The notes below the pieces were generated by a model that searched no databases, was not told where the DNA came from, and saw only the letters and a list, made by a program, of their open reading frames with translations. From contig NIVC01003838.1 of NCBI GenBank assembly GCA_002269645.1, forward strand, positions 10,444 through 74,443: 64,000 bases of DNA, written 5' to 3'. The position numbers and the translations under genes are program-made. Source of the DNA: Macrostomum lignano (Eukaryota). This document shows, in pieces, positions 1 to 54,200 of this stretch. Positions within the stretch are counted from its first letter, which is position 1, and each line of letters begins with the position of its first letter.

Positions 1-230
1 AACAGACACACAAACAACGCACCAGTTTTAGTATTAGGATAGAAGAGAGAGAGAGAGAGAGAGAAAGAGAGAAGAGAGAGAGAGATAAGAGGAGTTATCG
101 AACAGACACACAAACAACGCACCAGTTTTAGTATTAGGATAGAAGAGAGAGAGAGAGAGAGAGAAAGAGAGAAGAGAGAGAGAGATAAGAGGAGTTATCG
201 AACAGACACACAAACAACGCACCACTTTTA
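1..230. repeat. ~100-bp unit tandem repeat (2.3 copies) containing (GA)n
   Basis: 1-100 is nearly identical to 101-200, with a partial third copy. Confidence 0.9.
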
Positions 231-1063
231 ACACAGAAGACATAGAAGAGGGATGAAGAGGGACTCAGATAATGCCATAGACAATTAAAATTTGACCCAG
301 AAAACGAAGTGGGTAGTGTTAGACTAAAAATAAGTAGGATTCAGCAGAGAATTCGTTTTCATTTACCCAGTGATCGTTCGACTGCAATATCTAGATACTT
401 AAGCTATGTCTATTGCACACCTTATCAACTGGTCCCATCTGCCAGTGGATAGTCTCGACGGCGTTACATCTACCGAATATTCTTTCCTTGCGGAGCTGAG
501 CAGTGTTGATCACCGAGAAGATGCCCAACTGGAGGACTTTATCCATTTCATTACCTATCATTCACGCTCTGAAGATCAGCTGCTTGGTGTCGTTCTACCG
601 GACGTCGAAGAAGGAAAAGATTTAATTGCTACGGACAGCATGGATTGTCATTGCTTAACTTAAATTAAATTATTATAATTGGCTACTAGTATGCTTTATA
701 TACAATGCAATTAGATAGTATGTTACAGCGTTACTCGTAATGGCCATACTCGTGTTATGGCCATTATTTTACTCCGTAACATACAATATAATCTACCATT
801 GCTGATTTCAGCAATTGGCCATTTAGCGAGGGGGAGGCCGCTATCTCAATAAACGCTCAGACCAAGACCGTTCGCCTAATAAAGTTGAACCAACCATACT
901 ACAGACACTCTGCGTGGACAGTCAGAGGAATTGGACCATTTTCAAGAACAAACCATGCAGACATTTGCTTTGGACACTTGTACTCTAAACACTTGCCCCT
1001 GGATCGTGGACACTCAGCGCCGAGTCAATGCTCACCCTATGGACCCAACTCCGGCCTGTTAAA

Positions 1064-1430
1064 CCTCACCTCCAGCCTGCACCACCCCACTAGCCTGCAC
1101 CACCCCACCTCCAGCCTGCACCACCCCACCACCAGCCTGCACCACCCCACCTCCAGCCTGCACCACCCCACCTCCAGCCTGCACCACCCCACCTCCAGCC
1201 TGCACCACCCCACCACCAGCCTGCACCACCCCACCTCCAGCCTGCACCACCCCCACCTCCAGCCTGCACCACCCCACCTCCAGCCTGCACCACCCCCACC
1301 TCCAGCCTGCACCACCCCACCTCCAGCCTGCCCTACCCCACCTCCAGCCTGCACCACCCCACCTCCAGCCTGCACCACCCCACCAGCCTGCACCACCCCA
1401 CCTCCGGCCTGTCCCACCCCACCTCCCACC
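1064..1430. repeat. 21-bp minisatellite ctccagcctgcaccaccccac
   Basis: Direct inspection; generates ORFs 885-1490 and 1037-1471. Confidence 0.9.
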
Positions 1431-1713
1431 CTACCCCTGGCCTGCCACACCCCATCTCCAGTCTGCCCCACTTCAGCTCCACTGCTTTAAAACTCAAGTC
1501 TAAGTCCTCGTCGCTTAAAGTGGACCCTTTAATTCCTTTTACTCACACAGATTAGATAATTTCTGTACTGATAGTTTTAGCTATCTTACTGCTTTTTGAT
1601 CAACTGGTTACAATCAGTTCATACACTGTTCGGGACAGCTGCCCTATGCTACACAAATTAGTCAGTTAACTCTTCTAAAACTGCACGTTTTTCACCAACA
1701 ACTCACATTTCAG

Positions 1714-4446
1714 ATGCAGTCTCAGCGACTCAGAGCTGAGCGAGCAGCTGCACTCAGCACTGGAGCAGCCAGGCTTCACCGAATCCCGAGCCGCATTGCC
1801 GATGTCCTGCAGCAGATTCTGAGAAGTCGACTCAGATACGATGACTTTTTTATCGTCGGCAGCTACTCAGAAGGCTGGGGCAACAGCCTGACGACACTGG
1901 ACGGCAGAACTGACGCCAATTCCGACATTGATGTGATGATGTTGCTTCCCGGCCGAGAATACCACCAGAGAGGCCTGTGCGAGTGCGATGGAGCTCCGGA
2001 GCAGCACGAGTTTGTGAACGGGCACATTCAGTGCTCAGGATTCGGTGAGTTCTCTCTTGGGGGTGAAATGGTCTGTGAGTTCTGTTATTAGAATTATTCT
2101 GTTATTCCGCTAGAGATTCTGGCAGTGCAGACGTTTGCTTTTTGCGCGTAAGGCATTGGTGCAGAAAATATTCTGTACGCGATGGCTGAGCTCAGTAAGC
2201 AGATCTAAACAAGAGCCTGACTGTCCTGACAGTCTGGGTTGGCAAATTCCATTTATTATGCACAAGCTGTTGAAACCTGCGGATTTTTAACCCGCTGAAA
2301 TTCAATCTCCACTGGAGCCCAGAAACCAAATTTACTCAAAGCTCGTTTCACATCTATCCTAACTATTAACAAGTTTAGTTTGAGCTTGACTTCAGATTTC
2401 AGAAACTGTTTAAAGTGTTCACAGCAACTAAGCAGAGTAGGCATGCAAAACATCAGCAAAACCAATAAGCAACATATGTGAGGAGTGATAAAATATAATT
2501 TAGTATTGAAAGTGCAAATTGACAGTAGAAGTTCCTGTTTCAGAAGGTTCTCAACAAATGGTTCAACCATATCCTTGAGTTCCGTGTGCTGGGGTTGGTC
2601 TATTCTGGCAAGAATGTAAGAAAACTCGACAAGATTGTTGGTGTCAAATTTGAGTAGCATTGGTAAAAGTGGAGCAACGCTATGGAGGGTTAAGTGAAAT
2701 ATTACGCACTTTAGCAGTTTTTGCACTTTTAGGTAAGAGGACTCAAATTAAGGGAATTCTAAGGTAGTCTGAGACCTCCGCAGTGAGTTTAGGGTGCAAA
2801 ATATCGAGTCATTTGGTTGAGCGGTTTGCGTGTCCATAGCAAAGTTTCACAACAAATTTCACATACTCAGACAGACAGGGTTCTTTCCTAATTATTCCAA
2901 ACTAAAACTAATTATTCCACTGCACAGACTCAAAGCTGCATATTGCTCAATCGGGAACCAAATCGTTTTTACAGCCTCCAATCCTGCTCATGCGACACGC
3001 GGATGCACACTGAGGCCAGCGCTGGACGATGTCTCCGCATGCCGTCTCTGCCGCTACCCGCCCATCGCGCCGCTGCAGCCAAACCGCGTCTCCAACATCC
3101 CCCATCCGGTGCTGGAGGCCCTCCGCAAGGCTCTCACCTCCGCCTCATCGCCCTGCCACGTGGTGCACGCAGCCTCTCCTGACCGAGGCGGCGAAGAGCT
3201 CCGCGTGAGCACCAGCTTCCTGGAGAACCGGATGCTGCGAAGTCTCTCTACCCTGCAAGGTCAACTGTTTGTCACGCTGAAATACCTGGTCAAGAAGGTC
3301 ATCTGTCACAAGAATGGCTTCAATCAGCAAGGCTTGAAGTCCTACCACGTGAAGACCATCACCTTCCGAATGGTGGACGACACGCCGGTCGAGCAGTGGA
3401 AGAAGGAGAACCTCGTGAGTCTCACGAGACAGTCGCTGCAGATGCTGCTCGACTGTGTGGAGAAGAGCCGAGAGCAGGACAGACAAACACCTGACAAACC
3501 TGACCGATCTCGGGGTCGCATCATGAATCATTTCTTTCTCAGCGATGCGGCCATCTACCTCAAGGGTGCGGACAAGGAGAGAGTGGACCAGCATTTGGAC
3601 GGCATCATGAGCACACTGAGAACAGTAATCGATCGGCTGCCCCAACTGCTGCAGCAGTTCATCGGCAGTCTCAGACCTGTGAGCGACTCAGGCACATTCT
3701 ACTTCCACCCGTTCCAAATCCTGCCGGATCTGAGTCCGATGCCACTCACAGAGTCCAGTGCTCTCGAGTACTATCAGATCTACGACGTGGTGAGAGAGTG
3801 TCTGGTGCGTCTCTCTTGCAGTGACTGCAGCCCGCGATCTCAGGAGTCGCTCACAGAGCTGATTGCCAGACTGCCAGACTGCGCCCTCTCAGCACGGGAG
3901 GCTCTCAGAGCGCTGGCTTGCCTGAAGTTCGGCTACCGAGGAACTGCAGAGAGAGTCGTGAGCTCGTGCTCAGGTCACTCGGTTAGCAGAGGCATCGCTT
4001 GGTCTCGTGAGAAGTCGGCGACTGAAGCGACTGAGGAGTTCGTGATGCGGCATCTGAGGAGCCACGACACGGCATGGAAGTTCTGCTTCAAGTTCGACCA
4101 GCGACCGAAACTCGAATTCTTGCCAGGAGCTCTGAGGGAGTGCTTTCCCCTCCGGTTGTCGGGCAGTACTGACAATTTCTACATGAACTTCGACGCTCTG
4201 CTGTGGGCTCTGCGGCTCGAGCTGCGGACTGATGGAGAAGCGCGCGCTCAGGACTGGATCCGGGATGTGGCTGAGAGAGAGGACTCGGATGAGCAGGAGC
4301 TGCAGGTTGCCTCTTTTTATGCTTCGAATCGGGAGCAGCTTCAGGAAATATCAAAGAAGCTGAAGATGATGGAAGCAGTTCTTCCTGATGGGCTGAAGAA
4401 GAGACTGCTGGAAAAATGGCAGTTTTTAAGGGCTGTTTGGCAGTGA
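1714..4446 (+). CDS. cGAS-like receptor (cGLR) / Mab-21 nucleotidyltransferase, 600 aa; exons 1714-2044, 2975-4446
   Basis: GSYSEG...SDIDVM motif (G49-S50, D71, D73), third acidic residue in ALDDVS (D128/D129). Mab-21 helical motifs LRVSTSFLE, LKYLVKK, LKSYHVKTITF, W..ENL, MNHFF. Phase-1 GTGAGT donor at 2045 joins the TTTTACAG acceptor at 2974 in frame (1803 nt). Confidence 0.88.
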
Positions 4447-5575
4447 AAACTGTAGGAAGTTTTTTTAGTACATAAAAACTTTTTTGGCCCAGATGATGAG
4501 CTGGTAATTAATATATCTTATTTATGAACTCTTTTTCATCCTTAATAGCTTTAACTAAAACTGTTTTACTTGTGAGCTGGTGGTTAATTAGCTACGAGTA
4601 TCTAAAGAATTCTAAAGCATTCTACTACTGAAGCCACTGAAGCCAATTATGAAGCCACTGAAAAGTTTCACTAATGAACAATAATGGCAGTGCCATTGTC
4701 GTTGAATTCGTTGGAAATTCCGATGTTTATAACAAAGTTGTCAGTTCAACCTTATTTGAGCCAGAATATGTACATAAATTTTCTCATTAATAAATTTATC
4801 CAATTCCGCTTTCGTTTGCAGTTAACTGACGGCTTTGGCTACTCAATATTCACAGTTTCAAGTCTTTTAAATATTGTTCTGTGTTAGTTTAAATGCTTGG
4901 TAATCATATACAGAAGCTGGAGATGATGAGAGCCCATTAGAGACCTCCTGCTCATGCTCATTGTCTGCGGGACAAGTGCAAGTGAAAATGTGGCCCAGAT
5001 TAGCAAGTCTTTATTCTCTCAGTCCTTGGCTCGCTGTGTCAGAGGGCGTCATGCAGGCACAAAGGCCCAAAACAGATCAGAACAGAAGATCAAAGCAAAG
5101 TTGTGCGACCGAGGACCGGAAAGAGTTCGAAGTGCGGATTGTAAAGATGATCAACCTGATTAGAAAGTCTGGTGACATCCAGTTTAAACATATATCTGGT
5201 TTGCCCTGTCACTGGTGGCCTGGGCTGGCACGAGGTAAGTCGGTACAGATGGACCAGGGGTGCCACACTTGCTGATCAAAAAAATAAGATAGATGGGCCA
5301 CTTCACTAAATGCATTCTTACCAAGGACTGCTAAGCAAACAAACAATTTAAGTAATTTTAAGTAGTCCTTGCTCCTTACATAGTCTGTGTTTCTCCAGAG
5401 CTTCAACTGTTCAAAAACTGCAGTTAAACAAATATATTTTGTACGGCGGCTTTTGACGAACACACGAAGGGTTTGTAACGCAATTTAAATATAAACAGAA
5501 AAATTGCAAATTAAAACTGTTTTGCTGAAGCCGGCTATGGTGCAAGTGGGAGGGCGCCGGCGCTTAAGCGGCAGA

Positions 5576-7285
<1,710 letters not shown>

Positions 7286-7437
7286 GCATAACAGGGAGGT
7301 AAAATTGTGCAGATAAGGCTATAAAAGAAGATCCAAAATAAAGTTATTAATAATCGCTGTAAAAATCAAACGCAGCATTGTAGCAAAAGATTTCGTGAGA
7401 CAGAGCAGCTGTTTAGCGAGCCCGAAGTCAGCCAGCC

Positions 7438-10400
7438 TCACACAGCGGATAGATTCTGCAGCGATGTCGAGGACCTGCTCAGGGACAGTTCGACTTGCTT
7501 TTGCACTGCGGGCATAAAAATAGAAAATTCTTGTTTGATTCCGGATTTGCAACAGCTGTTGCAAGTTTGGTCTGGGGACAAATTAGACAATTTAATTGCA
7601 TCTTGTATTCGGCGCCACACCTGCGGTTCTGTTACCCCCCCCCCCCATGAGGTGGAAATTCAGGAAGCGTTCAGGAGGCTCCAGGAAGCATCAACTCGTC
7701 AGAGTTTTCGGGGCGTTGAGGAATTTTTGAAGAACGGAGTGATTTCCCCGGACACAGTTCTTCTCAAAACTTCACAGATGCTATGCCTCGTATACTCACC
7801 GGACACAATCCCCACCGGACAGCCCGCACTCACCGGACACAATCTCCGCCGGACAGCCCGCACTCACCGGACACAATCCCCGCCGGACAGCCCGCACTCA
7901 CCGGACACAATCCCCACCGGACAGCCCGCACTCACCGGACACAATCTCCGCCGGACAGCCCGCACTCACCGGACACAATCCCCACCGGACAGCCCGCACT
8001 CACCGGACACAATCCCCACCGGACAGCCCGCACTCACCGGACACAATCCCCACCGGACAGCCCGCACTCACCGGACACAATCCCCGCCGGACAGCCCGCA
8101 CTCACCGGACACAATCCCCACCGGACAGCCCGCACTCACCGGACACAATCCCCACCGGACAGCCCGCACTCACCGGACACAATCCCCGCCGGACAGCCCG
8201 CACTCACCGGACACAATCCCCGCCGGACAGCCCGCACTCACCGGACACTCGGACGCCGCGGCCAACCGTGTCAATCAGGGTGTAGCGGTCCAGATGCCGG
8301 CTAATGGAAATCCCAGACCGGTGGAATCCCCTCCTGGCCAGGCTGTCCATCCGGCAGTGCTCCGGCCAGGCCAGCCGGTGCTCTCCGGACAGGGCCGGCA
8401 GTCCGTCCTTGCCGCCACCGCCGCCGGCCGCCCCGGACAGTCGAGCCCAGTCGCGGCTGCCGATGTAGCTTGGCCGGCCGCCGGCCGAGGAGGCGGCGAG
8501 TTTCGGCTCGGTTCTCGACCGAGTCATGAAGCTGAACGGGGCGGGGTACCTCGACTGCTCGGCAGCTGGTTCGACGGCCAGGAGGTCGTCCGGCGCCGTG
8601 GGGGTCAGTATCGTCACCCGACGCTTTCCGGAGGCTTTCGCGGGCGCTGCTGCGTCGGCTCCGGCCGAGCCGTGTCGCTGGTCGATGGCCAGCAGCAGGG
8701 CGGGGCTGCGGCTGGAGCTGCCGCCGGGTGTGCAGATGACGTTGTCGCGTCCGGGCACGAACTCTCTGTGGGTTGGGGAGTTCGGCAGCTTGTTGCAGTG
8801 CTGGGATGTGGGGTGTGGGAGCTTTAGTTCGTCTGTTTGTTTTGTTGTGGTTGCTGCCCGGTTGACTATGAGAGAGCGGACGGGTATGTGAGGATAGGTA
8901 GATAGACAGGTAGATCGACAGGTAGATAGACAGGTAGACAGACAGGTAGATAGACAGGTAGAGAGACAGGTAGAGAGATAGGTAGACAGACAGGTAGATG
9001 TTTAAACGGGATATACAGATAGGTGAACGGACAAGTAGGTGGACAGGTAGGCACAGCAGGAGAGAACGGCGTAGTGAAAATGTTGATGGAGGTGAGGCAC
9101 CGGGATGCAGGCAAGATCGAAATCAGAAACAAAAATATAACACCAGATTCATCCTAATCTCAAAAAAGATTCTGCAACATCTGTTATCTAAGAAATCATC
9201 TTTGCCACACAGATAAACCGTTTACTCAACTGAGATATGAAGGGTAAATGGCAAGACCTATATTGTATTCATATCAGACAAAGCCCAGATGTTAATATTG
9301 TGAATCGATTTTTACACGTAACTCTGGCAATCGTTAAAGGTGTGGTACGTAAGGTACCAAATAACTTCTGTGTTAAGTGAATTTATGAGCTCAGCTCAAT
9401 ACAATTTGGTGACAAAAAACCGACTAGAATTTGTTAGAACATTAGCAACTCGATTATAAAAGTGCTTGATGTACTTTTCTCCTGTTTCAAGCCGATTCAG
9501 GCCATAGACTATCTGTCTAGCCCGCCTGTTAGCTGGCTCAGTATCAACTGGCTGAATTTTCGGCAGATTTAGCAGCATCTTTAGAATCCGATGATCGTCT
9601 AGGAGGCTGTGAAATTCGATTCCAGTTTCAGTTAAAAAATTGGACTCAAGACCCACCACCCCATTTTCTCCACTCCAGACCCACCACCAAATTTTCTCCA
9701 ACCCAGACCCACCACCCTATTTTCGTCACCCCAGACCCCACCATCCCATTTTCCACTCCAGACCCACCACCCTATTTTCTGCACCCACACCCAGCACCCC
9801 ATTTTCTGCACTCCAGACCCACCACCCCATTTTCTCCACTCCAGACCCACCACCCATTTTCTGCACTCCAGACCCACCACCCCATTTTCTCCAACCCAGA
9901 CCCACCACCCCATTTTCGTCATCCCAGACCCCACCATCCCATTTTCCACTCCAGACCCACCACCCCATTTTCTGCACTCCAGACCCACTACTTTGTCTTC
10001 ACCCTAGACCCACCAGCCCATTTTCTTCTCTCCAGACCGACCACCCCATTTTTCCGACAGCCACTGTTACTTACTCGTACAATCCAGTGTGCTGCGGCAG
10101 CAGCGGCTGTCGTCCACTCTGCTGACTCAACCGGCCTCCTTTGTCCAAGCGACTGTCAACTAAGAGCACATCGGGCAGCTGCTGCAGTGGAGACTTAAAT
10201 GTAAGAAAGGGAAGAAGTACTGCAAATTTTATCTTTTTTACTTCAAAATTCACACCTATCTACTATTAGTATTCTAGGTGATAAGAATTTACCAGACACT
10301 GGAAATTAAAACTCAAATTCACTCAGACTCATTCACAGACTGGTCACACCTTGATGCTCACCTGTCTCCAAGTGCCAGTGCTGCTACTTCTGCTATCAGT

Positions 10401-13400
10401 TCTGATGTCGCTCCGTCCACTGTGATTGGCTGATCGATTTTTCCTCACTGATGCCGTGCTTGGCCGGGCTCTGAGTTCCACGGTGACGCTGCCGCTGTCG
10501 GGCGCTCCTTCGGCGCCACGGCTGCCACCTGCGCTGCCACTGCCGCTGCCGCTGCCGCTGCTGCTGCCGCTGCTGTCGCTGCGCTGTTGCTGCTCTTCAC
10601 TGAGCACCGTCAGAGGCGGCTGATGCTGCTGAACGGGCGGCTGCTGCTGCAGCTGCTGTAGATTCTGCGATGAGGCTTCGAGACTGTCCGAAGTCAGCGT
10701 CGTCCGAGTGGCATCCCGGCCAGGTGCGTGATGGCGGTCTGGATGGGTAGGGACAGTGTCTATAGATCTAGTGTGTGATCTATAGATCTAGTGTGTGATC
10801 TATAGATCTAGTGTGTGATCTATAGAATCTAGTGTGTGATCTATAGAATCTAGTGTGTGATCTATAGAATCTAGTGTGTGATCTATAGAATCTAGTGTGT
10901 GATCTATAGATCTAGTGTGTGATCTATAGAATCTAGTGTGTGATCTATAGATCTAGTGTGTGATCTATAGATCTAGTGTGTGATCTATAGATCTAGTGTG
11001 TGATCTATAGATCTAGTGTGTGATCTATAGAATCTAGTGTGTGATCTATAGAATCTAGTGTGTGATCTATAGAATCTAGTGTGTGATCTATAGAATCTAG
11101 TGTGTGATCTATAGATCTAGTGTGTGATCTATAGAATCTAGTGTGTGATCTATAGAATCTAGTGTGTGATCTATAGAATCTAGTGTGTGATCTATAGATC
11201 TAGTGTGTGATCTATAGATCTAGTGTGTGATCTATAGATCTAGTGTGTGATCTATAGAATCTAGTGTGTGATCTATAGAATCTAGTGTGTGATCTATAGA
11301 ATCTAGTGTGTGATCTATAGATCTAGTGTGTGATCTATAGATCTAGTGTGTGATCTATAGAATCTAGTGTGTGATCTATAGATCTAGTGTGTGATCTATA
11401 GATCTAGTGTGTGATCTATAGATCTAGTGTGTGATCTATAGAATCTAGTGTGTGATCTATAGAATCTAGTGTGTGATCTATAGAATCTAGTGTGTGATCT
11501 ATAGATCTAGTGTGTGATCTATAGATCTAGTGTGTGATCTATAGATCTAGTGTGTGATCTATAGAATCTAGTGTGTGATCTATAGAATCTAGTGTGTGAT
11601 CTATAGAATCTAGTGTGTGATCTATAGATCTAGTGTGTGATCTATATAATCTAGTGTGTGATCTATAGATCTAGTGTGTGATCTATAGATCTAGTGTGTG
11701 ATCTATAGAATCTAGTGTGTGATCTATAGAATCTAGTGTGTGATCTATAGAATCTAGTGTGTGATCTATAGATCTAGTGTGTGATCTATAGATCTAGTGT
11801 GTGATCTATAGATCTAGTGTGTGATCTATAGATCTAGTGTGTGATCTATAGAATCTAGTGTGTGGTCTATAGAATCTAGTGTGTGATCTATAGAATCTAG
11901 TGTGTGGTCTATAGAATCTAGTGTGTGATATATAGAACCCAGTTTGTAATCCATAGAATCTAGTTTTGGATCTATAGAATCGATCGCTTTTAATCTGTAG
12001 AAACTGGGCTCTATCAAGGTTTTCTAATTTACAGTCAGTCTGCAGAATCTGTCACTCCAATCTACAGAGTCTGTCACCCCAATCTACAGAATCTGTCACC
12101 TCAATCTACAGAACCTGTCACCCTAATCTACAGAACCTGTCATCCCAATCTACAAAATCTGTCACCCTCAATCTACAGAATCTGTCACCCTAATCTACAG
12201 AACCTGTCACCCCAATCTACAGAACCTGTCACTCTAATCTACAGAACCTGTCACTCTAATCTACAGAACCTGTCACCCAAATCTACAGAATCTGTCACTC
12301 TAATTTACAGAACCTGTCACTCTAATCTACAGAATCTGTCACCCCAATCTACAGAATCTGTCACCCCAATCTACAGAACCTGTCACCCCAATCTACAGAA
12401 TCTGTCACCCTAATCTACAGAATCTGTCACCCTAATCTACAGAACCTGTCACCCAAATCTACAGAATCTGTCACTCTAATTTACAGAACCTGTCACTCTA
12501 ATCTACAGAACCTGTCACCCCAATCTACAGAACCTGTCACCCCAATCTACAGAATCTGTCACCCCAATCTACAGAATCTGTCACCCTAATCTACAGAATC
12601 TGTCACTCTAATCTACAGAACCTGTCACCCCAATCTACAGAATCTGTCACCCCAATCCACAGAACCTGCAGCTCAGTCTCACCCCAAGCGGTCAGGCTGG
12701 TGACCTCGCTGCTCCCCAGCCCCGAGTCCGCAAAACTGGCCGCTCTAGCGGGTCTCTTCGCTCGCGCAGCCTCCTTGACAGAAGATGCAGCTGATGAGGT
12801 CCTTTCCTGCTCCGTCTCAACTTTTTCCTCCGCAGCCTCCTTCTCAGCTTCATCCGGGTTTTGAGGCAGGTTTTTCAACCGAACCATCAGGTCGCTTTTG
12901 AACAGCTGCACCACCGGCTCGTCCCGTGCCAGCAGCGCCTCCTCATCCTGTCTGACCATCCCGGAAGATTCTCGAGAGGCCAAAGCCAGGGCGGAGTCGG
13001 CGGCGGCTGCAGAGGACTTCACAGCTTCAGCCTTCGCCGCTTCGGCAGCTGCGGCGGTGGCGGCAGCGGCAGCGGCGGCCGCGGCAGCCTCTTGAAGGCG
13101 GACATCGAGTTCTTGACGAACGGTGTTCCACCTCTGAAGTGGTGAAGGAGTGGGATTGGAATTGAATTAGCAATCCATCTGAGATAGATTAGCAATCCCA
13201 TGTGAGATAGATTAGCAATCCATCTGAGATAGATTAGCAATCCCATGTGAGATAGATTAGCAATCCCATGTGAGATAGATTAGCAATCCATCTGAGATAG
13301 ATTAGCAATCCCATCTGAGATAGATTAGCAATCCCATGTGAGATAGATTAGCAATCCATGTGAGATAGATTAGCAATCCATGTGAGATAGATTAGCAGTC

Positions 13401-51278: not shown

Positions 51279-54200
51279 TCACAGCAGGCGCAGAATCGTG
51301 TAGGGCACGTGACCAACCTCGCCAATGTAGTTGCGCAGCTGCCACCAGTTGCGCGAATCGTCCAGCACTTCAAGCAGTTCGCCGCGCTGCACAGTCAGCT
51401 CCTTGGCGTTTCGGCCGGCTTTGTCGTGCAGCACCTGCACAACCCGGCGACCGCGGGACTCGGCCTCCGAACGGAGCCGCTCCTGACGCTCGTCCCAGCT
51501 GCTGGCGGCGCCGAAGCCGGCTCCGTTGAAGCTCCGCCGGGCTGCCTGACGGTGGCCAACACCAAAGGAGGACTGCCGAGGCTGGGCGTAAATCGACGGC
51601 TGAGCCAGCTGAGGGCCTCTGGGTGCCACCTGAGCAACGGGACGCTGCGGCTGCGATGGCTGGACTTTGGGGCCGTTGTTTCCGCCGCGGCTGTAGGGGC
51701 TGTGCGGCTGGGCCATTGTCACCGGGTTGATCTGGGCAGGTTCGTTGTGGGGAAACATTGGCACACTTTATGGGTAATTTTGAAGGTGAATTGTAAATTA
51801 TCATAGATTGGAAATAGAGATGAGACACATCTATCAGACAGGCGGACATGAAACACGGACATGAGACACGGAAATCAGAAGCGGACATGGAACACGGACA
51901 TGAGACATGAAACACGGACATGAGACACGGAAATCAGAAGCGGACATGGAACACGGACATGAGACATGGACACGAGACAAGGATATGAGACACGGACATG
52001 AGACAGGCTCAGCTCATCACCTTGATGACAGGCTGCTGCCTGGGCGCGGCGCCGCCATTAACCATCGGAGCGGCAGCCTGGGACTTGGACAGTCCCTGGC
52101 CGAGCAGCTCGGGTTCGAGCTCGGGCTGCCAGCCGTCCCGCTTGAACCGGGGCCGGTAGGGCGGCACGTCGCCAGCCTGCTGCTGATGCTCGTCGATCCA
52201 GCGCTGCCGGTGGCAGGTCCAGGCGTTGCCAAGGCTGTACCAGAGCTCGCACTCCTTGGATGTCAGGCAGTGCTTCAGCAGCGCCACGGCGGCCGGGGTG
52301 AGCAGAGGCGACAGCACCCGGGAGGGCAGGTCCGGCCCGATCGACTGCGGGGCGAGGGGGTGCGGCGGGATTCGATAATGACTGATATGCAAATATGGAA
52401 TAGGTTTGTACTGTGGATACGCTGAACAGAGAGTTGCTAAGATAAACAGAGAAGAGATGGGGTGAGACAGGATGAGACAGGAAGAGAGACAAGACAAGAC
52501 AATACCAGACAGGATGGTGGGAGACAAGACCACACAGGATGAGAGACAAGACAAGACCAGACAGGATGGGAGACAAGACCAGACAGGATGTGGGACAAGA
52601 CCAGGCAGTATGAGAGACAAGACCACACAGGATGGGAGACAAGACCAGACAGGATGTGAGACAAGACCAGACAGGATGGGAGACAAGACCAGGCAGTAGG
52701 AGAGACAAGACCACACAGGATGGGAGACAAGACCAGACAGGATGGGAGACAAGACCAGACAGGATGTGAGACAAGACCACACAGGATGGGAGACAAGACC
52801 ACACAGGATGGGAGACAAGACCAGACAAGGTAAGAGACAAGACCAGACAAGGTAAGAGACAAGACCAGACAGGATGAGAGACAAGACCAGACAGGGTAAG
52901 AGACAAGACCAGACAGGATGAGAGACAAGACCAGACAAGGTAAGAGACAAAACCAGACAGGATGGGAGACAAGACCAGACAGGATGAGAGACAAGACCAG
53001 ACAGGATGTGAGACAAGACCAGACAGGATGAGAGACAAGACCAGACAGGATGTGAGACAAGACCAGACAGGATGAGAGACAAGACCAGACAGGATGAGAG
53101 ACAAAACCAGACAAGGTGTGAGACAAGACCAGACAGGATGAGAGACAAGACCAGACAGGATGTGAGACAAGACCAGACAGGGTAAGAGACAAGACCAGAC
53201 AGGATGAGAGACAAGACCAGACAGGATGAGAGACAAAACCAGACAAGGTGTGAGACAAGACCAGACAGAATGAGAGACAAGACCAGACAGGATGTGAGAC
53301 AAGACCAGACAGGGTAAGAGACAAGACCAGACAGGATGAGAGACAAGACCAGACAGGATGAGAGACAAGACCAGACAGGATGTGAGACAAGACCAGACAG
53401 GGTGGGAGACAAGACCAGACAGGATGAGAGACAAGACCAGACAGGGTGAGAGACAAGACCAGACAGGATGAGCCAGATATCACAGACACTGCAGCAGACA
53501 AGCCGCACCTGCACAATGAGAACCAGCGGAACGAACAGGCAGTGCACCAGCTCGGGGCATTGGGCTGATGAATCCGGCCCTCCAGCCGGCCTAGCAGATT
53601 CAGAGCCAGTTTCAATTTTTTCAAAATGTCCACAAAATCCTCGGTGCTGGGCAGCGCCTGATGGGGCGGCGAGTGCCGCTCTGAGCGGTGCGACCTCGGG
53701 GTGGCGGGATGCTGCGGTTGCGGCTGCTGCTGCTGAATGCGCAAGGAGAATGCCTCCACCTCTTCTAGGCATCGATTCAGGACCTTTAGACAGACCAAAA
53801 ATAAGCATCTTTGTTATAGTGAACTGATTGTTCACCCGCACCGAAATCATAACCTACCCAGACTAACATTATAACCTACCCAGAATAGCATTATAACCTA
53901 CCCAGAATAGCACCATAACCTACCCAGACTACCATTATAACCTACCCAGACCACCATAACCTACCCAGACTGGCACCATAACCTACCCAGACTACCATAA
54001 CCTACCCAGACTACCATAACCTACCCAGACTACCATAACCTACCCAGACTACAATTCCAAGCTACCCAGACGGCTTCCCTTCCTGTTGCTCACCTGCACC
54101 AACTGTGACGAATCAGCTGCCTCCCCGTTGGTGCCGCCGCCTCTACCGCCGCCGCCCAGGCCGCTGCCAAAGAACTGCTGAATGAGCTGGTGCATCTCCT

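What the first reader, a model, noticed from the sequence alone, without database searches (positions are those of the whole stretch)
1714..4446. Intact, divergent cGAS-like receptor: candidate invertebrate cyclic-nucleotide immune sensor
Seen: a complete 600-aa two-exon ORF with the GS activation motif, D71-x-D73 and a third Asp (D128/129), plus the Mab-21 helical lobe. Established: cGLRs make cyclic dinucleotides that activate STING, and their ligands and products vary among animals. Inference: an enzymatically competent sensor of unknown ligand and product. The spacing from D73 to the third Asp is only about 55 aa, shorter than in cGAS. No STING gene is present in this window.
Basis: partly seen in the sequence, partly recalled or inferred. 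Interest (0 to 1): 0.72.

Follow-up and report, generated by a model that had tools for sequence, protein, structure and literature searches.

The report
Flatworm cGAS-like gene, frameshifted start
This is one copy of a large, already catalogued family of cGAS-like genes in the flatworm Macrostomum lignano. Its enzyme core looks fully preserved, but it has no ankyrin exon nearby and its first 28 codons are read out of the family's frame, so it is an ordinary and possibly decaying family member, not a new kind of sensor.

Summary
The two-exon ORF is real: 1714-2044 plus 2975-4446, GT..AG intron, 600 aa. G49-S50, D71-x-D73 and D128 align with cGAS G212-S213, E225/D227 and D319 (family profile against a cGAS/cGLR alignment: 97% probability, E 4e-11, over the whole catalytic domain). 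An AlphaFold model (pLDDT 86) finds cGAS and MAB21L1 as its best PDB matches.

The window is Macrostomum lignano. The gene belongs to a lineage-specific family of dozens of paralogues. Most of these carry N-terminal ankyrin repeats, and all carry an uncharacterised C-terminal extension of about 260 aa.

Li et al. 2023 already list M. lignano ankyrin-cGLRs. They cloned five for their biochemical screen, and none is among their 15 noted active enzymes.

"Intact" is doubtful. Compared with a close paralogue, this copy has a 13-nt deletion at 1796/1797. Residues 1-28 are therefore an out-of-frame reading of a segment conserved across the family, and the ATG at 1714 is in frame only because of that deletion. 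No ankyrin exon lies within the 1.7 kb available upstream.

Downstream of residue 29 the protein matches the family consensus at 96 of 97 highly conserved positions.

Verdict: a new member of a known kind. It is either an ankyrin-less cGLR with a new start codon or a young pseudogene. Its ligand, product and receptor are unknown.

The parts
1708..1713 (+). TTTCAG acceptor-type site immediately before the ATG. It fits the M. lignano trans-splice acceptor motif [T/C]TNCAG and is homologous to the acceptor that follows the ankyrin exon in paralogue P0006.
   Evidence: It is the only AG downstream of the last ancestral-frame stop (AG at 1712-1713).
1714..2044 (+). Exon 1 (331 nt): ATG at 1714-1716 and residues 1-110 plus one base. 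It holds G49-S50 (1858-1863), D71 (1924-1926), D73 (1930-1932) and the conserved H84/C89/C91/H104 cluster (1963-2025).
1715..1822 (+). Remnant of the ancestral reading frame (CSLSDSELSEQLHSALEQPGFTESRAAL). It matches the conserved N-terminal segment of all paralogues and runs into TGA at 1820-1822 because of the deletion.
1796..1797 (+). Site of a 13-nt deletion relative to paralogue locus L001. This deletion brings ATG 1714 into frame with the cGLR domain.
   Evidence: (alignment A2, columns 202-214). The same N-terminus is present in P0005/A0A1I8FXA2.
2045..2974 (+). Intron (930 nt, GTGAGT...TTTTACAG). About 530 nt (2089-2616) has no counterpart in the roughly 368-nt intron of L001.
2975..4446 (+). 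Exon 2 (1472 nt): residues 111-600 and the stop TGA at 4444-4446.
3025..3027 (+). D128 codon. This is the third catalytic Asp and aligns with cGAS D319.
3202..3225 (+). R187-V-S-T-S-F-L-E194, the counterpart of the cGAS W-R376-LSFSHI-E383 nucleotide-binding motif. R187, S189, T190 and E194 are invariant in the family.
3274..3468 (+). Mab-21_C (PF20266) match, residues 211-275. It includes K213 (= cGAS K414) and S233-Y234-H235-V-K237 (= cGAS S435-Y436-H437-V-K439).
3664..4443 (+). Family-specific C-terminal extension, residues 341-600. It is mostly helical with a small sheet and is modelled confidently, but it has no Pfam, PDB-sequence or clear PDB-fold match.

Best explanation
The locus is one paralogue of the Macrostomum lignano-specific expansion of ankyrin-linked cGAS-like receptors (cGLRs).

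Shown:
- Residues ~29-340 are homologous to the whole cGAS catalytic domain and have the same fold.
- The GS loop, the three metal-binding acidic residues (D71, D73, D128) and the residues that line the cGAS nucleotide pocket (R187, S189, E194, K213, S233, Y234, H235, K237) are all in place.
- The cGAS zinc thumb is absent.
- A His/Cys cluster (H84, C89, C91, H104) lies between the second and third Asp and is conserved across the family.
- A conserved 260-aa extension of unknown fold follows the Mab21 domain.

Inferred:
- The family are ligand-activated nucleotidyltransferases. They would hold two NTPs with Mg2+/Mn2+ on the Asp triad and make a cyclic di- or oligonucleotide signal.
- The ankyrin repeats and the C-terminal domain would serve ligand sensing, regulation or partner binding.

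This copy is atypical. It has no adjacent ankyrin exon, and a 13-nt deletion shifts the frame of its first exon. Translation can therefore only reach the enzyme domain from the ATG at 1714, or from the AUG at the end of the spliced leader if the TTTCAG at 1713 is a trans-splice acceptor. The product would be an ankyrin-less protein with a non-homologous 28-residue N-terminus.

I think this is somewhat more likely a still-translated, ankyrin-less cGLR than a dead copy. Only transcript data can settle that.
For: **Identity and family**
- All 30 homologues are M. lignano proteins. The best are 87% identical, and many carry Ank plus Mab-21_C.
- All ten further members I looked up are M. lignano.
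- 19 of 23 members match PF20266 and 16 of 23 have ankyrin repeats.

**Homology to cGAS**
- hhalign of the family profile against a cGAS/cGLR alignment gives 97.2% probability and E 4e-11, query 2-337 against template 14-365. Catalytic and nucleotide-binding residues are matched column by column.

**Fold**
- The AF2 model has mean pLDDT 86.1 and pTM 0.85.
- Foldseek against the PDB puts cGAS first (E 4e-7), then MAB21L1 and MiD51, then CdnE and OASL.

**Conservation**
- G49, S50, D71, D73, D128, H84, C89, C91 and H104 are each at least 90% conserved down to 33% identity.
- This copy departs from consensus at 1 of 97 highly conserved columns.
- It has fewer lineage-specific changes than its close paralogue, 13 against 25.
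- Neither copy has a stop across ~570 codons, despite dS of 0.09.

**Start codon**
- The 13-nt deletion and the two reading frames are shown.
- The spliced leader ends in ATG and the trans-acceptor motif is [T/C]TNCAG (PMC8629364). SL-ATG joined at 1714 reads MMQSQ... in the model's frame.
- The deletion is also present in a second, non-identical sequence (P0005).

**Prior classification**
- Li et al. 2023 (PMC9980059) list M. lignano Ank-cGLRs and cloned five of them.
Against: - I could reach no transcript or protein evidence for this copy.
- The frameshift removes the conserved segment LSxQLHxALxxSGFxxSRAALQSA. This segment aligns with the N-terminal spine helix of cGAS, and part of it lies inside the constructs of Li et al..
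- dN/dS against the closest paralogue is high, 0.74 overall and 0.97 for residues 451-600.
- The five relatives cloned by Li et al. are not among their 15 noted active enzymes.
- Pfam's NTase-core model PF03281 matches no family member.
- cGAS and STING are reported lost in Schistosoma and Schmidtea. I did not test whether M. lignano has STING.
Confidence: 0.55

Rival explanations
1. This is a young pseudogene. The copy lost its ankyrin exon(s) and then suffered a 13-nt frameshifting deletion in its first remaining coding exon. The long ORF from ATG 1714 would be an accident: an out-of-frame ATG that already existed in the ancestor, with an open downstream frame only because too little time has passed for stops to accumulate.
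For: - The same ATG is present in paralogue L001, where it is out of frame and stops after 46 codons. It therefore predates the deletion and was not selected as a start.
- The conserved N-terminal segment is destroyed.
- There is no ankyrin exon within 1.7 kb upstream here or 10 kb upstream in L001. In P0006 it ends about 100 nt upstream of the homologous acceptor.
- dN/dS is 0.74.
- The other sequence that carries the deletion differs at only about 4 of 440 aligned residues, so the deletion may be very recent.
Against: - 96 of 97 highly conserved positions are retained, and this copy has fewer derived changes than the paralogue with the ancestral frame.
- There is no stop or further frameshift in 572 codons.
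- The deletion happens to restore an ATG-initiated frame that would also be read from the spliced-leader AUG.
- None of these points excludes a very recent inactivation.
Confidence: 0.33
2. This is a non-enzymatic Mab21-type protein. The family would use the cGAS fold as a nucleotide-binding scaffold or adaptor, as proposed for MAB21L1 and MiD51. The ankyrin repeats and C-terminal domain would mediate protein interactions, and no second messenger would be made.
For: - MAB21L1 and MiD51 are among the best structural matches.
- Five relatives cloned for the screen are not noted as active.
- PF03281 is not matched.
- Reported loss of STING in other flatworms leaves no obvious receptor.
Against: - The GS motif, all three acidic residues and the counterparts of cGAS R376, E383, K414 and S435-Y436-H437 are conserved across paralogues as low as 33% identical. 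That is hard to explain without selection on catalysis.
[quoted passage not shown] A negative result there is weak.
Confidence: 0.1

Closest known systems
Macrostomum lignano ankyrin-cGLRs catalogued by Li et al. 2023 (PMC9980059). Examples: PAA86972.1, PAA45980.1, PAA57558.1, PAA93208.1 and PAA68676.1 (screen samples 89-93). Close paralogues here include BOX15_Mlig022050g1 (P0001) and UniProt A0A1I8FXA2 (P0005).
   Same: - Same species and same domain order from the NTase core onward.
- Shared motifs: GS[YF]xEGWG...SDIDV, RPAxDxVxA, LRVSTxFLE, QGQxF, K(S/T)YHAKT and FHPF.
- The same C-terminal extension of about 260 aa.
- 87% identity to the nearest paralogues.
   Different: - No ankyrin exon next to this copy.
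- A 13-nt deletion changes the frame of the first 28 codons and removes the conserved LSxQLH...SGFxxSRAALQSA segment.
- The start codon is a former out-of-frame ATG.
Vertebrate cGAS (human/mouse; PDB 6CT9, 7UUX, 4K8V)
   Same: - Mab21/cGLR fold.
- Residue matches: GS loop; E225/D227/D319 = D71/D73/D128; R376, E383, K414 and S435-Y436-H437 = R187, E194, K213 and S233-Y234-H235.
- The catalytic domain is moderately basic, pI 8.4 against 9.1.
   Different: - Only about 14-20% identity.
- 55 residues between the second and third acidic residue, against 92 in cGAS.
- No zinc thumb (H390/C396/C397/C404 region deleted).
- A different conserved His/Cys cluster inside the NTase core.
- No disordered basic N-terminus.
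- An extra 260-aa C-terminal domain.
Ankyrin- or TPR-fused invertebrate cGLRs, e.g. in the coral Stylophora pistillata (Li et al. 2023)
   Same: A cGLR core fused to N-terminal repeat modules is a recognised minority architecture of the family.
   Different: - The Macrostomum proteins form their own lineage-specific radiation.
- They carry an additional C-terminal domain.
- This copy lacks the repeats.
MAB21L1 / MiD51 (Mab21-fold proteins without proven cyclase activity)
   Same: Same fold, and among the best structural matches.
   Different: - The family keeps the full GS plus triad signature that Li et al. require of cGLR enzymes.
- Conservation is at catalytic positions, not only at scaffold positions.

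Membership tests
cGLR (criteria of Li et al. 2023, PMC9980059) | Catalytic residues of the motif, namely GS, then [DE]x[DE] 8-20 residues later, then a third [DE] 50-90 residues later | tested here: met
   - G49-S50, then 20 residues, then D71-I-D73-V, then 52 residues, then L127-D128.
- All five residues are at least 90% conserved in 23 family members.
- They align to cGAS G212-S213, E225, D227 and D319.
cGLR (criteria of Li et al. 2023, PMC9980059) | Literal flanking positions of the motif: h[QT]GS and h[DE]h | tested here: not met
   - V48 stands where Q/T is expected (I-V-G-S).
- D129 stands where a hydrophobic residue is expected after D128. Paralogues vary at this position: N, Q, F, L, H, I, E, R.
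- The M. lignano proteins that Li et al. accepted show the same deviations, e.g. VMGS and ILGS. These positions are evidently not treated as strict.
cGLR (criteria of Li et al. 2023, PMC9980059) | Sequence homology across both the NTase core and the C-terminal helix bundle | tested here: met
   hhalign gives 97.2% probability and E 4e-11, with query 2-337 against residues 14-365 of the 366-residue human cGAS construct. A single-sequence phmmer search against the PDB reaches cGAS only at E ~0.07, over residues 209-275.
cGLR (criteria of Li et al. 2023, PMC9980059) | Predicted structural homology to known cGLR/CD-NTase enzymes | tested here: met
   The AF2 model has pLDDT 86.1. Foldseek against the PDB gives 22 cGAS/MAB21L1 matches at E from 4e-7 to 6e-5, probability 1.00 and TM (by target) 0.45-0.58. 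CdnE scores 0.026.
cGLR (functional definition) | Ligand-stimulated synthesis of a nucleotide second messenger | not testable with these tools
   This needs biochemistry. Five relatives were cloned by Li et al., and none carries the note that marks their 15 active enzymes.
cGLR (functional definition) | Convergence of the three acidic side chains on a two-metal site in three dimensions | not testable with these tools
   Model coordinates are not exposed. The only indirect support is that D71/D73 and D128 each sit at the start of a modelled strand, 72-85 and 127-135.
Pfam Mab-21 (PF03281 NTase domain plus PF20266 HhH/H2TH-like domain) | Match to PF20266 above the gathering score | tested here: met
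   24.2 bits against a cut-off of 24.1, residues 211-275. 19 of 23 family members match.
Pfam Mab-21 (PF03281 NTase domain plus PF20266 HhH/H2TH-like domain) | Match to PF03281 | tested here: not met
   No match at E up to 10 for this protein, and none at E up to 0.01 for any of 23 members. The NTase core is too divergent for that profile.
Macrostomum ankyrin-cGLR subfamily | N-terminal ankyrin repeats encoded just upstream of the cGLR exon | tested here: not met
   tblastn with ankyrin-bearing paralogues finds nothing in window 1-1708. In P0006 the ankyrin exon ends about 100 nt upstream of the homologous acceptor. The window starts only 1713 nt upstream, so a distant exon cannot be excluded.
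Macrostomum ankyrin-cGLR subfamily | Conserved N-terminal segment LSxQLHxALxxSGFxxSRAALQSA, in frame with the enzyme domain | tested here: not met
   The segment is encoded at 1715-1798 but in another frame, which ends at TGA 1820-1822.
Macrostomum ankyrin-cGLR subfamily | C-terminal extension of about 260 aa (FHPF..., RLPDCAxSARE, SAWKFCF, NFDALL, EDADEQEL) and the H84/C89/C91/H104 cluster | tested here: met
   Both are present and conserved.

The most novel reading that the evidence does not exclude
The 13-nt deletion did not kill the gene. It converted an ankyrin-cGLR into a free-standing cGLR translated from a new start, possibly the spliced-leader AUG. This would make it a natural 'sensor module removed' variant.

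The family as a whole would then form a distinct cGLR subclass, defined by its own His/Cys metal site and a 260-aa C-terminal domain. It would signal through a product and receptor different from the canonical cGAMP-STING pair, in a phylum otherwise reported to have lost cGAS and STING.
Probability: 0.15. Interest if true: 0.6.

Novelty: new member of a known kind. Interest (0 to 1): 0.3.

Why it matters
Flatworms are usually described as having lost cGAS-STING signalling. Macrostomum is the exception, with dozens of cGLR genes whose ligands, products and receptor are all unknown. That family is worth biochemical study because M. lignano is a tractable model.

This locus adds little on its own. 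It shows that the radiation includes ankyrin-less, frame-altered copies, so gene counts and "intact active site" calls based on ORFs alone overstate the functional repertoire. It also gives a clean example of an out-of-frame ATG brought into frame by a small deletion.

Tried and rejected
1. **Shallow first structure prediction.** With the 18-sequence alignment the NTase core came out at pLDDT below 50 and was unusable. A 23-sequence alignment with more divergent members fixed this.
2. **Exhaustive profile search wasted.** I ran the search of 1.84 billion representatives with alignment A1. The ankyrin columns entered the profile, so the top 150 hits were mostly giant ankyrin proteins. It gave extra divergent family members but could not show whether the family exists outside Macrostomum. 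That question stays open.
3. **Global hhalign misaligned the N-terminus**. I used local mode instead.
4. **My first guess about the third Asp was wrong.** I suspected it had been replaced, reading ELRVSTSF as the cGAS SVDITLAL strand. LRVSTSFLE is in fact the WRLSFSHIE motif, and D128 is the third Asp.
5. **The C-terminal extension has no detectable relative.** There was no Pfam match, no significant PDB sequence match with a family profile and no convincing PDB or viral fold match.
6. **A search with the C-terminal alignment returned nothing,** not even the family itself. I treat that as a tool failure.
8. **No ankyrin remnants** turned up upstream in the window or in L001.
9. **Long ORFs elsewhere in the window:** ten of the ORFs of at least 170 aa were scanned against Pfam. 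No STING domain turned up, only an EPS8-like match and repeat artefacts.
10. **STING in M. lignano was not searched.** The word-indexed protein search would be swamped by vertebrate STINGs, so I ran no further search on it.
11. **Li et al. Table S1 is truncated in the held copy,** so I could not check whether this exact locus is in their list.
Full report
**Observation**

The reported ORF exists exactly as described. Exon 1 (1714-2044) ends at CG|GTGAGT and exon 2 (2975-4446) follows TTTTACAG|. Joined, they give 1803 nt, which is 600 codons plus TGA. G49-S50, D71-I-D73 and D128-D129 are at the stated positions. Pfam finds only Mab-21_C (PF20266) at residues 211-275, at 24.2 bits against a cut-off of 24.1. 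The NTase-core model PF03281 gives no match. A single-sequence search of PDB sequences reaches cGAS only at E ~0.07, over residues 209-275.

**Organism and family**

All 30 database homologues are Macrostomum lignano proteins.
- The closest are 87% identical.
- The rest are 44-58% identical, and many carry N-terminal ankyrin repeats.
- P0005 (UniProt A0A1I8FXA2, "Mab-21 domain-containing protein") has the same N-terminus and differs at about 4 of 440 aligned residues. It is a mis-merged model of this locus or of a near-identical copy, and it runs on into unrelated ORFs at 8317-8813 and 10086-10186.
- More divergent members, down to 33% identity, came from the representative search. All ten that I looked up are M. 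lignano.
- Only one copy lies in this window.

**Is it a cGAS-like enzyme?**

A 23-member family alignment was compared by hhalign with a small cGAS/cGLR alignment built from sequences in Li et al. Table S3. It aligns over the whole catalytic domain: query 2-337, template 14-365, 97.2% probability, E 4e-11.

| This protein | Human cGAS |
|---|---|
| G49-S50 | G212-S213 |
| D71 / D73 | E225 / D227 |
| D128 | D319 |
| R187 / E194 (LRVSTSFLE) | R376 / E383 (WRLSFSHIE) |
| K213 | K414 |
| S233-Y234-H235-V-K237 | S435-Y436-H437-V-K439 |

The human cGAS residue numbers and the roles of those residues come from my knowledge of the cGAS structures. The correspondence itself comes from the alignment.

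These positions are invariant or at least 90% conserved in the family. D129 is a change private to this copy (N129D), so D128 is the relevant residue.

With the deeper alignment, AlphaFold2 gives mean pLDDT 86.1 and pTM 0.85. Foldseek against the PDB returns cGAS first (E 4e-7), then MAB21L1, MiD51, NF90/NF45, CdnE and OASL.

The cGAS zinc thumb is missing. In its place the family has a conserved H84-x4-C89-x-C91-x12-H104 cluster between the second and third Asp, which is a candidate metal site.

I could not measure the geometry of the triad, because coordinates are not exposed.

**The other half of the protein**

Residues 341-600 lie outside the Mab21 fold.
- They are conserved in every family member.
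- They are confidently modelled as helices with a small sheet.
- They match nothing in Pfam, in PDB sequences or in PDB and viral folds.
- The cGLR domain is mildly basic (pI 8.4) and the extension is acidic (pI 5.9).

**Is it intact?**

- All paralogues begin the cGLR part with a conserved segment...SDSELSEQLHSALEQSGFTESRAALQSAAADVLQQIL.... In the window this segment is encoded at 1715-1798, but in a different frame from the model.
- Alignment with the close paralogue locus L001 (NIVC01001460.1; 87-93% nucleotide identity) shows a 13-nt deletion in the window between 1796 and 1797.
- Because of it, the ancestral frame stops at TGA 1820-1822, and the ATG at 1714 comes into frame with the enzyme domain. 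The same ATG is present in L001, where it stops after 46 codons.
- Residues 1-28 of the model are therefore not homologous to anything in the family. About half of the N-terminal helix, which aligns with the cGAS spine helix, is replaced.

The ATG sits directly after TTTCAG, the only usable acceptor. In the ankyrin-bearing paralogue P0006 the homologous TTTCAG follows a ~100-nt intron after the ankyrin exon. No ankyrin-coding sequence lies within 1.7 kb upstream here or 10 kb upstream in L001.

About 30% of M. lignano genes are reported as trans-spliced. The 35-nt leader ends in ATG and the acceptor motif is [T/C]TNCAG (PMC8629364). A leader joined at 1714 would read MMQSQ... in the model's frame. 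In the ancestral frame the junction makes TGA.

**Functional or decaying?**

Evidence that it is maintained:
- Downstream of residue 29 this copy keeps the consensus at 96 of 97 highly conserved columns.
- It has fewer lineage-specific changes than P0001, 13 against 25.
- It has no stop in 572 codons.

Evidence against:
- dN/dS against L001 is 0.74 overall. It is 0.27 in the Mab-21_C region and 0.97 in residues 451-600.
- The deletion may be recent, since the only other carrier is about 99% identical.

I cannot separate an ankyrin-less gene with a new start from a young pseudogene without transcript data. I put them at roughly 0.55 and 0.33, and a non-catalytic scaffold reading at about 0.1.

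**What is already known**

Li et al. 2023 (PMC9980059) define cGLRs by three criteria:
- the motif h[QT]GS-X8-20-[DE]h[DE]h-X50-90-h[DE]h;
- homology over both lobes;
[quoted passage not shown] Their tables nevertheless list M. lignano ankyrin-cGLRs. Samples 89-93 of their 140-protein screen are M. lignano family members, and the listed constructs start downstream of the ankyrin repeats. None carries the note that marks the 15 active enzymes.

Other work reports loss of cGAS and STING in Schistosoma (PMC4117786) and in Schmidtea (PMC13563047). I found nothing on STING in Macrostomum and did not test for it.

**Verdict**

This is a genuine cGLR-family gene with a preserved catalytic signature. 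It is an atypical, possibly decaying paralogue of a family that is already catalogued, so it counts as a new member of a known kind. The open biological questions concern the family as a whole and are not specific to this locus. They are the ligand, the product, the receptor, and the roles of the ankyrin repeats, the His/Cys cluster and the C-terminal domain.

Noticed in passing
window 1-230, 1063-1426, 5572-7286, 7794-8248, 9644-10052, 10759-11000: The gene is embedded in tandem-repeat DNA:
- a 100-nt repeat at the window start;
- a 21-nt x 17.5 array upstream;
- a (CAGACAGA) x 214 microsatellite downstream;
- a 34-nt x 13.4 array that creates the long repetitive 'ORF' at 7535-8827.

A stretch just before the 21-nt array (890-969) has a weak counterpart upstream of paralogue L001.
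   Followed up: partly
window 8317-8813 and 10086-10186: The UniProt model A0A1I8FXA2 (P0005) joins the cGLR to these unrelated downstream stretches and skips parts of exon 2. It is a gene-prediction artefact, not a real architecture.
   Followed up: partly
window 2089-2616 (inside the intron): About 530 nt of the 930-nt intron has no counterpart in the ~368-nt intron of paralogue L001 and no second copy in the window. It may be an insertion of unknown origin.
   Followed up: no
window 1963-2025 (H84, C89, C91, H104): An H-x4-C-x-C-x12-H cluster is conserved across the family inside the NTase core, where cGAS has none. The cGAS zinc thumb is absent. This is a possible alternative metal site.
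   Followed up: partly
window 52009-53850 (-): A 613-aa ORF with an EPS8 spectrin-like domain match (PF22975, E 2e-14). It is probably an exon of an unrelated EPS8-type gene.
   Followed up: no
P0031 (1346 aa) and P0017 (1036 aa), M. lignano proteins: These database models contain two complete cGLR units in series. They are either tandem genes merged by annotation or true multi-cGLR fusions of the kind Li et al. mention.
   Followed up: no
L001:9988-12146 (paralogue P0001, NIVC01001460.1): The closest paralogue keeps the ancestral frame but has no start codon in its first exon and no ankyrin exon within 10 kb upstream. It is annotated 'partial', and it has accumulated more private amino-acid changes than the window copy. 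It may itself be the decaying copy.
   Followed up: partly
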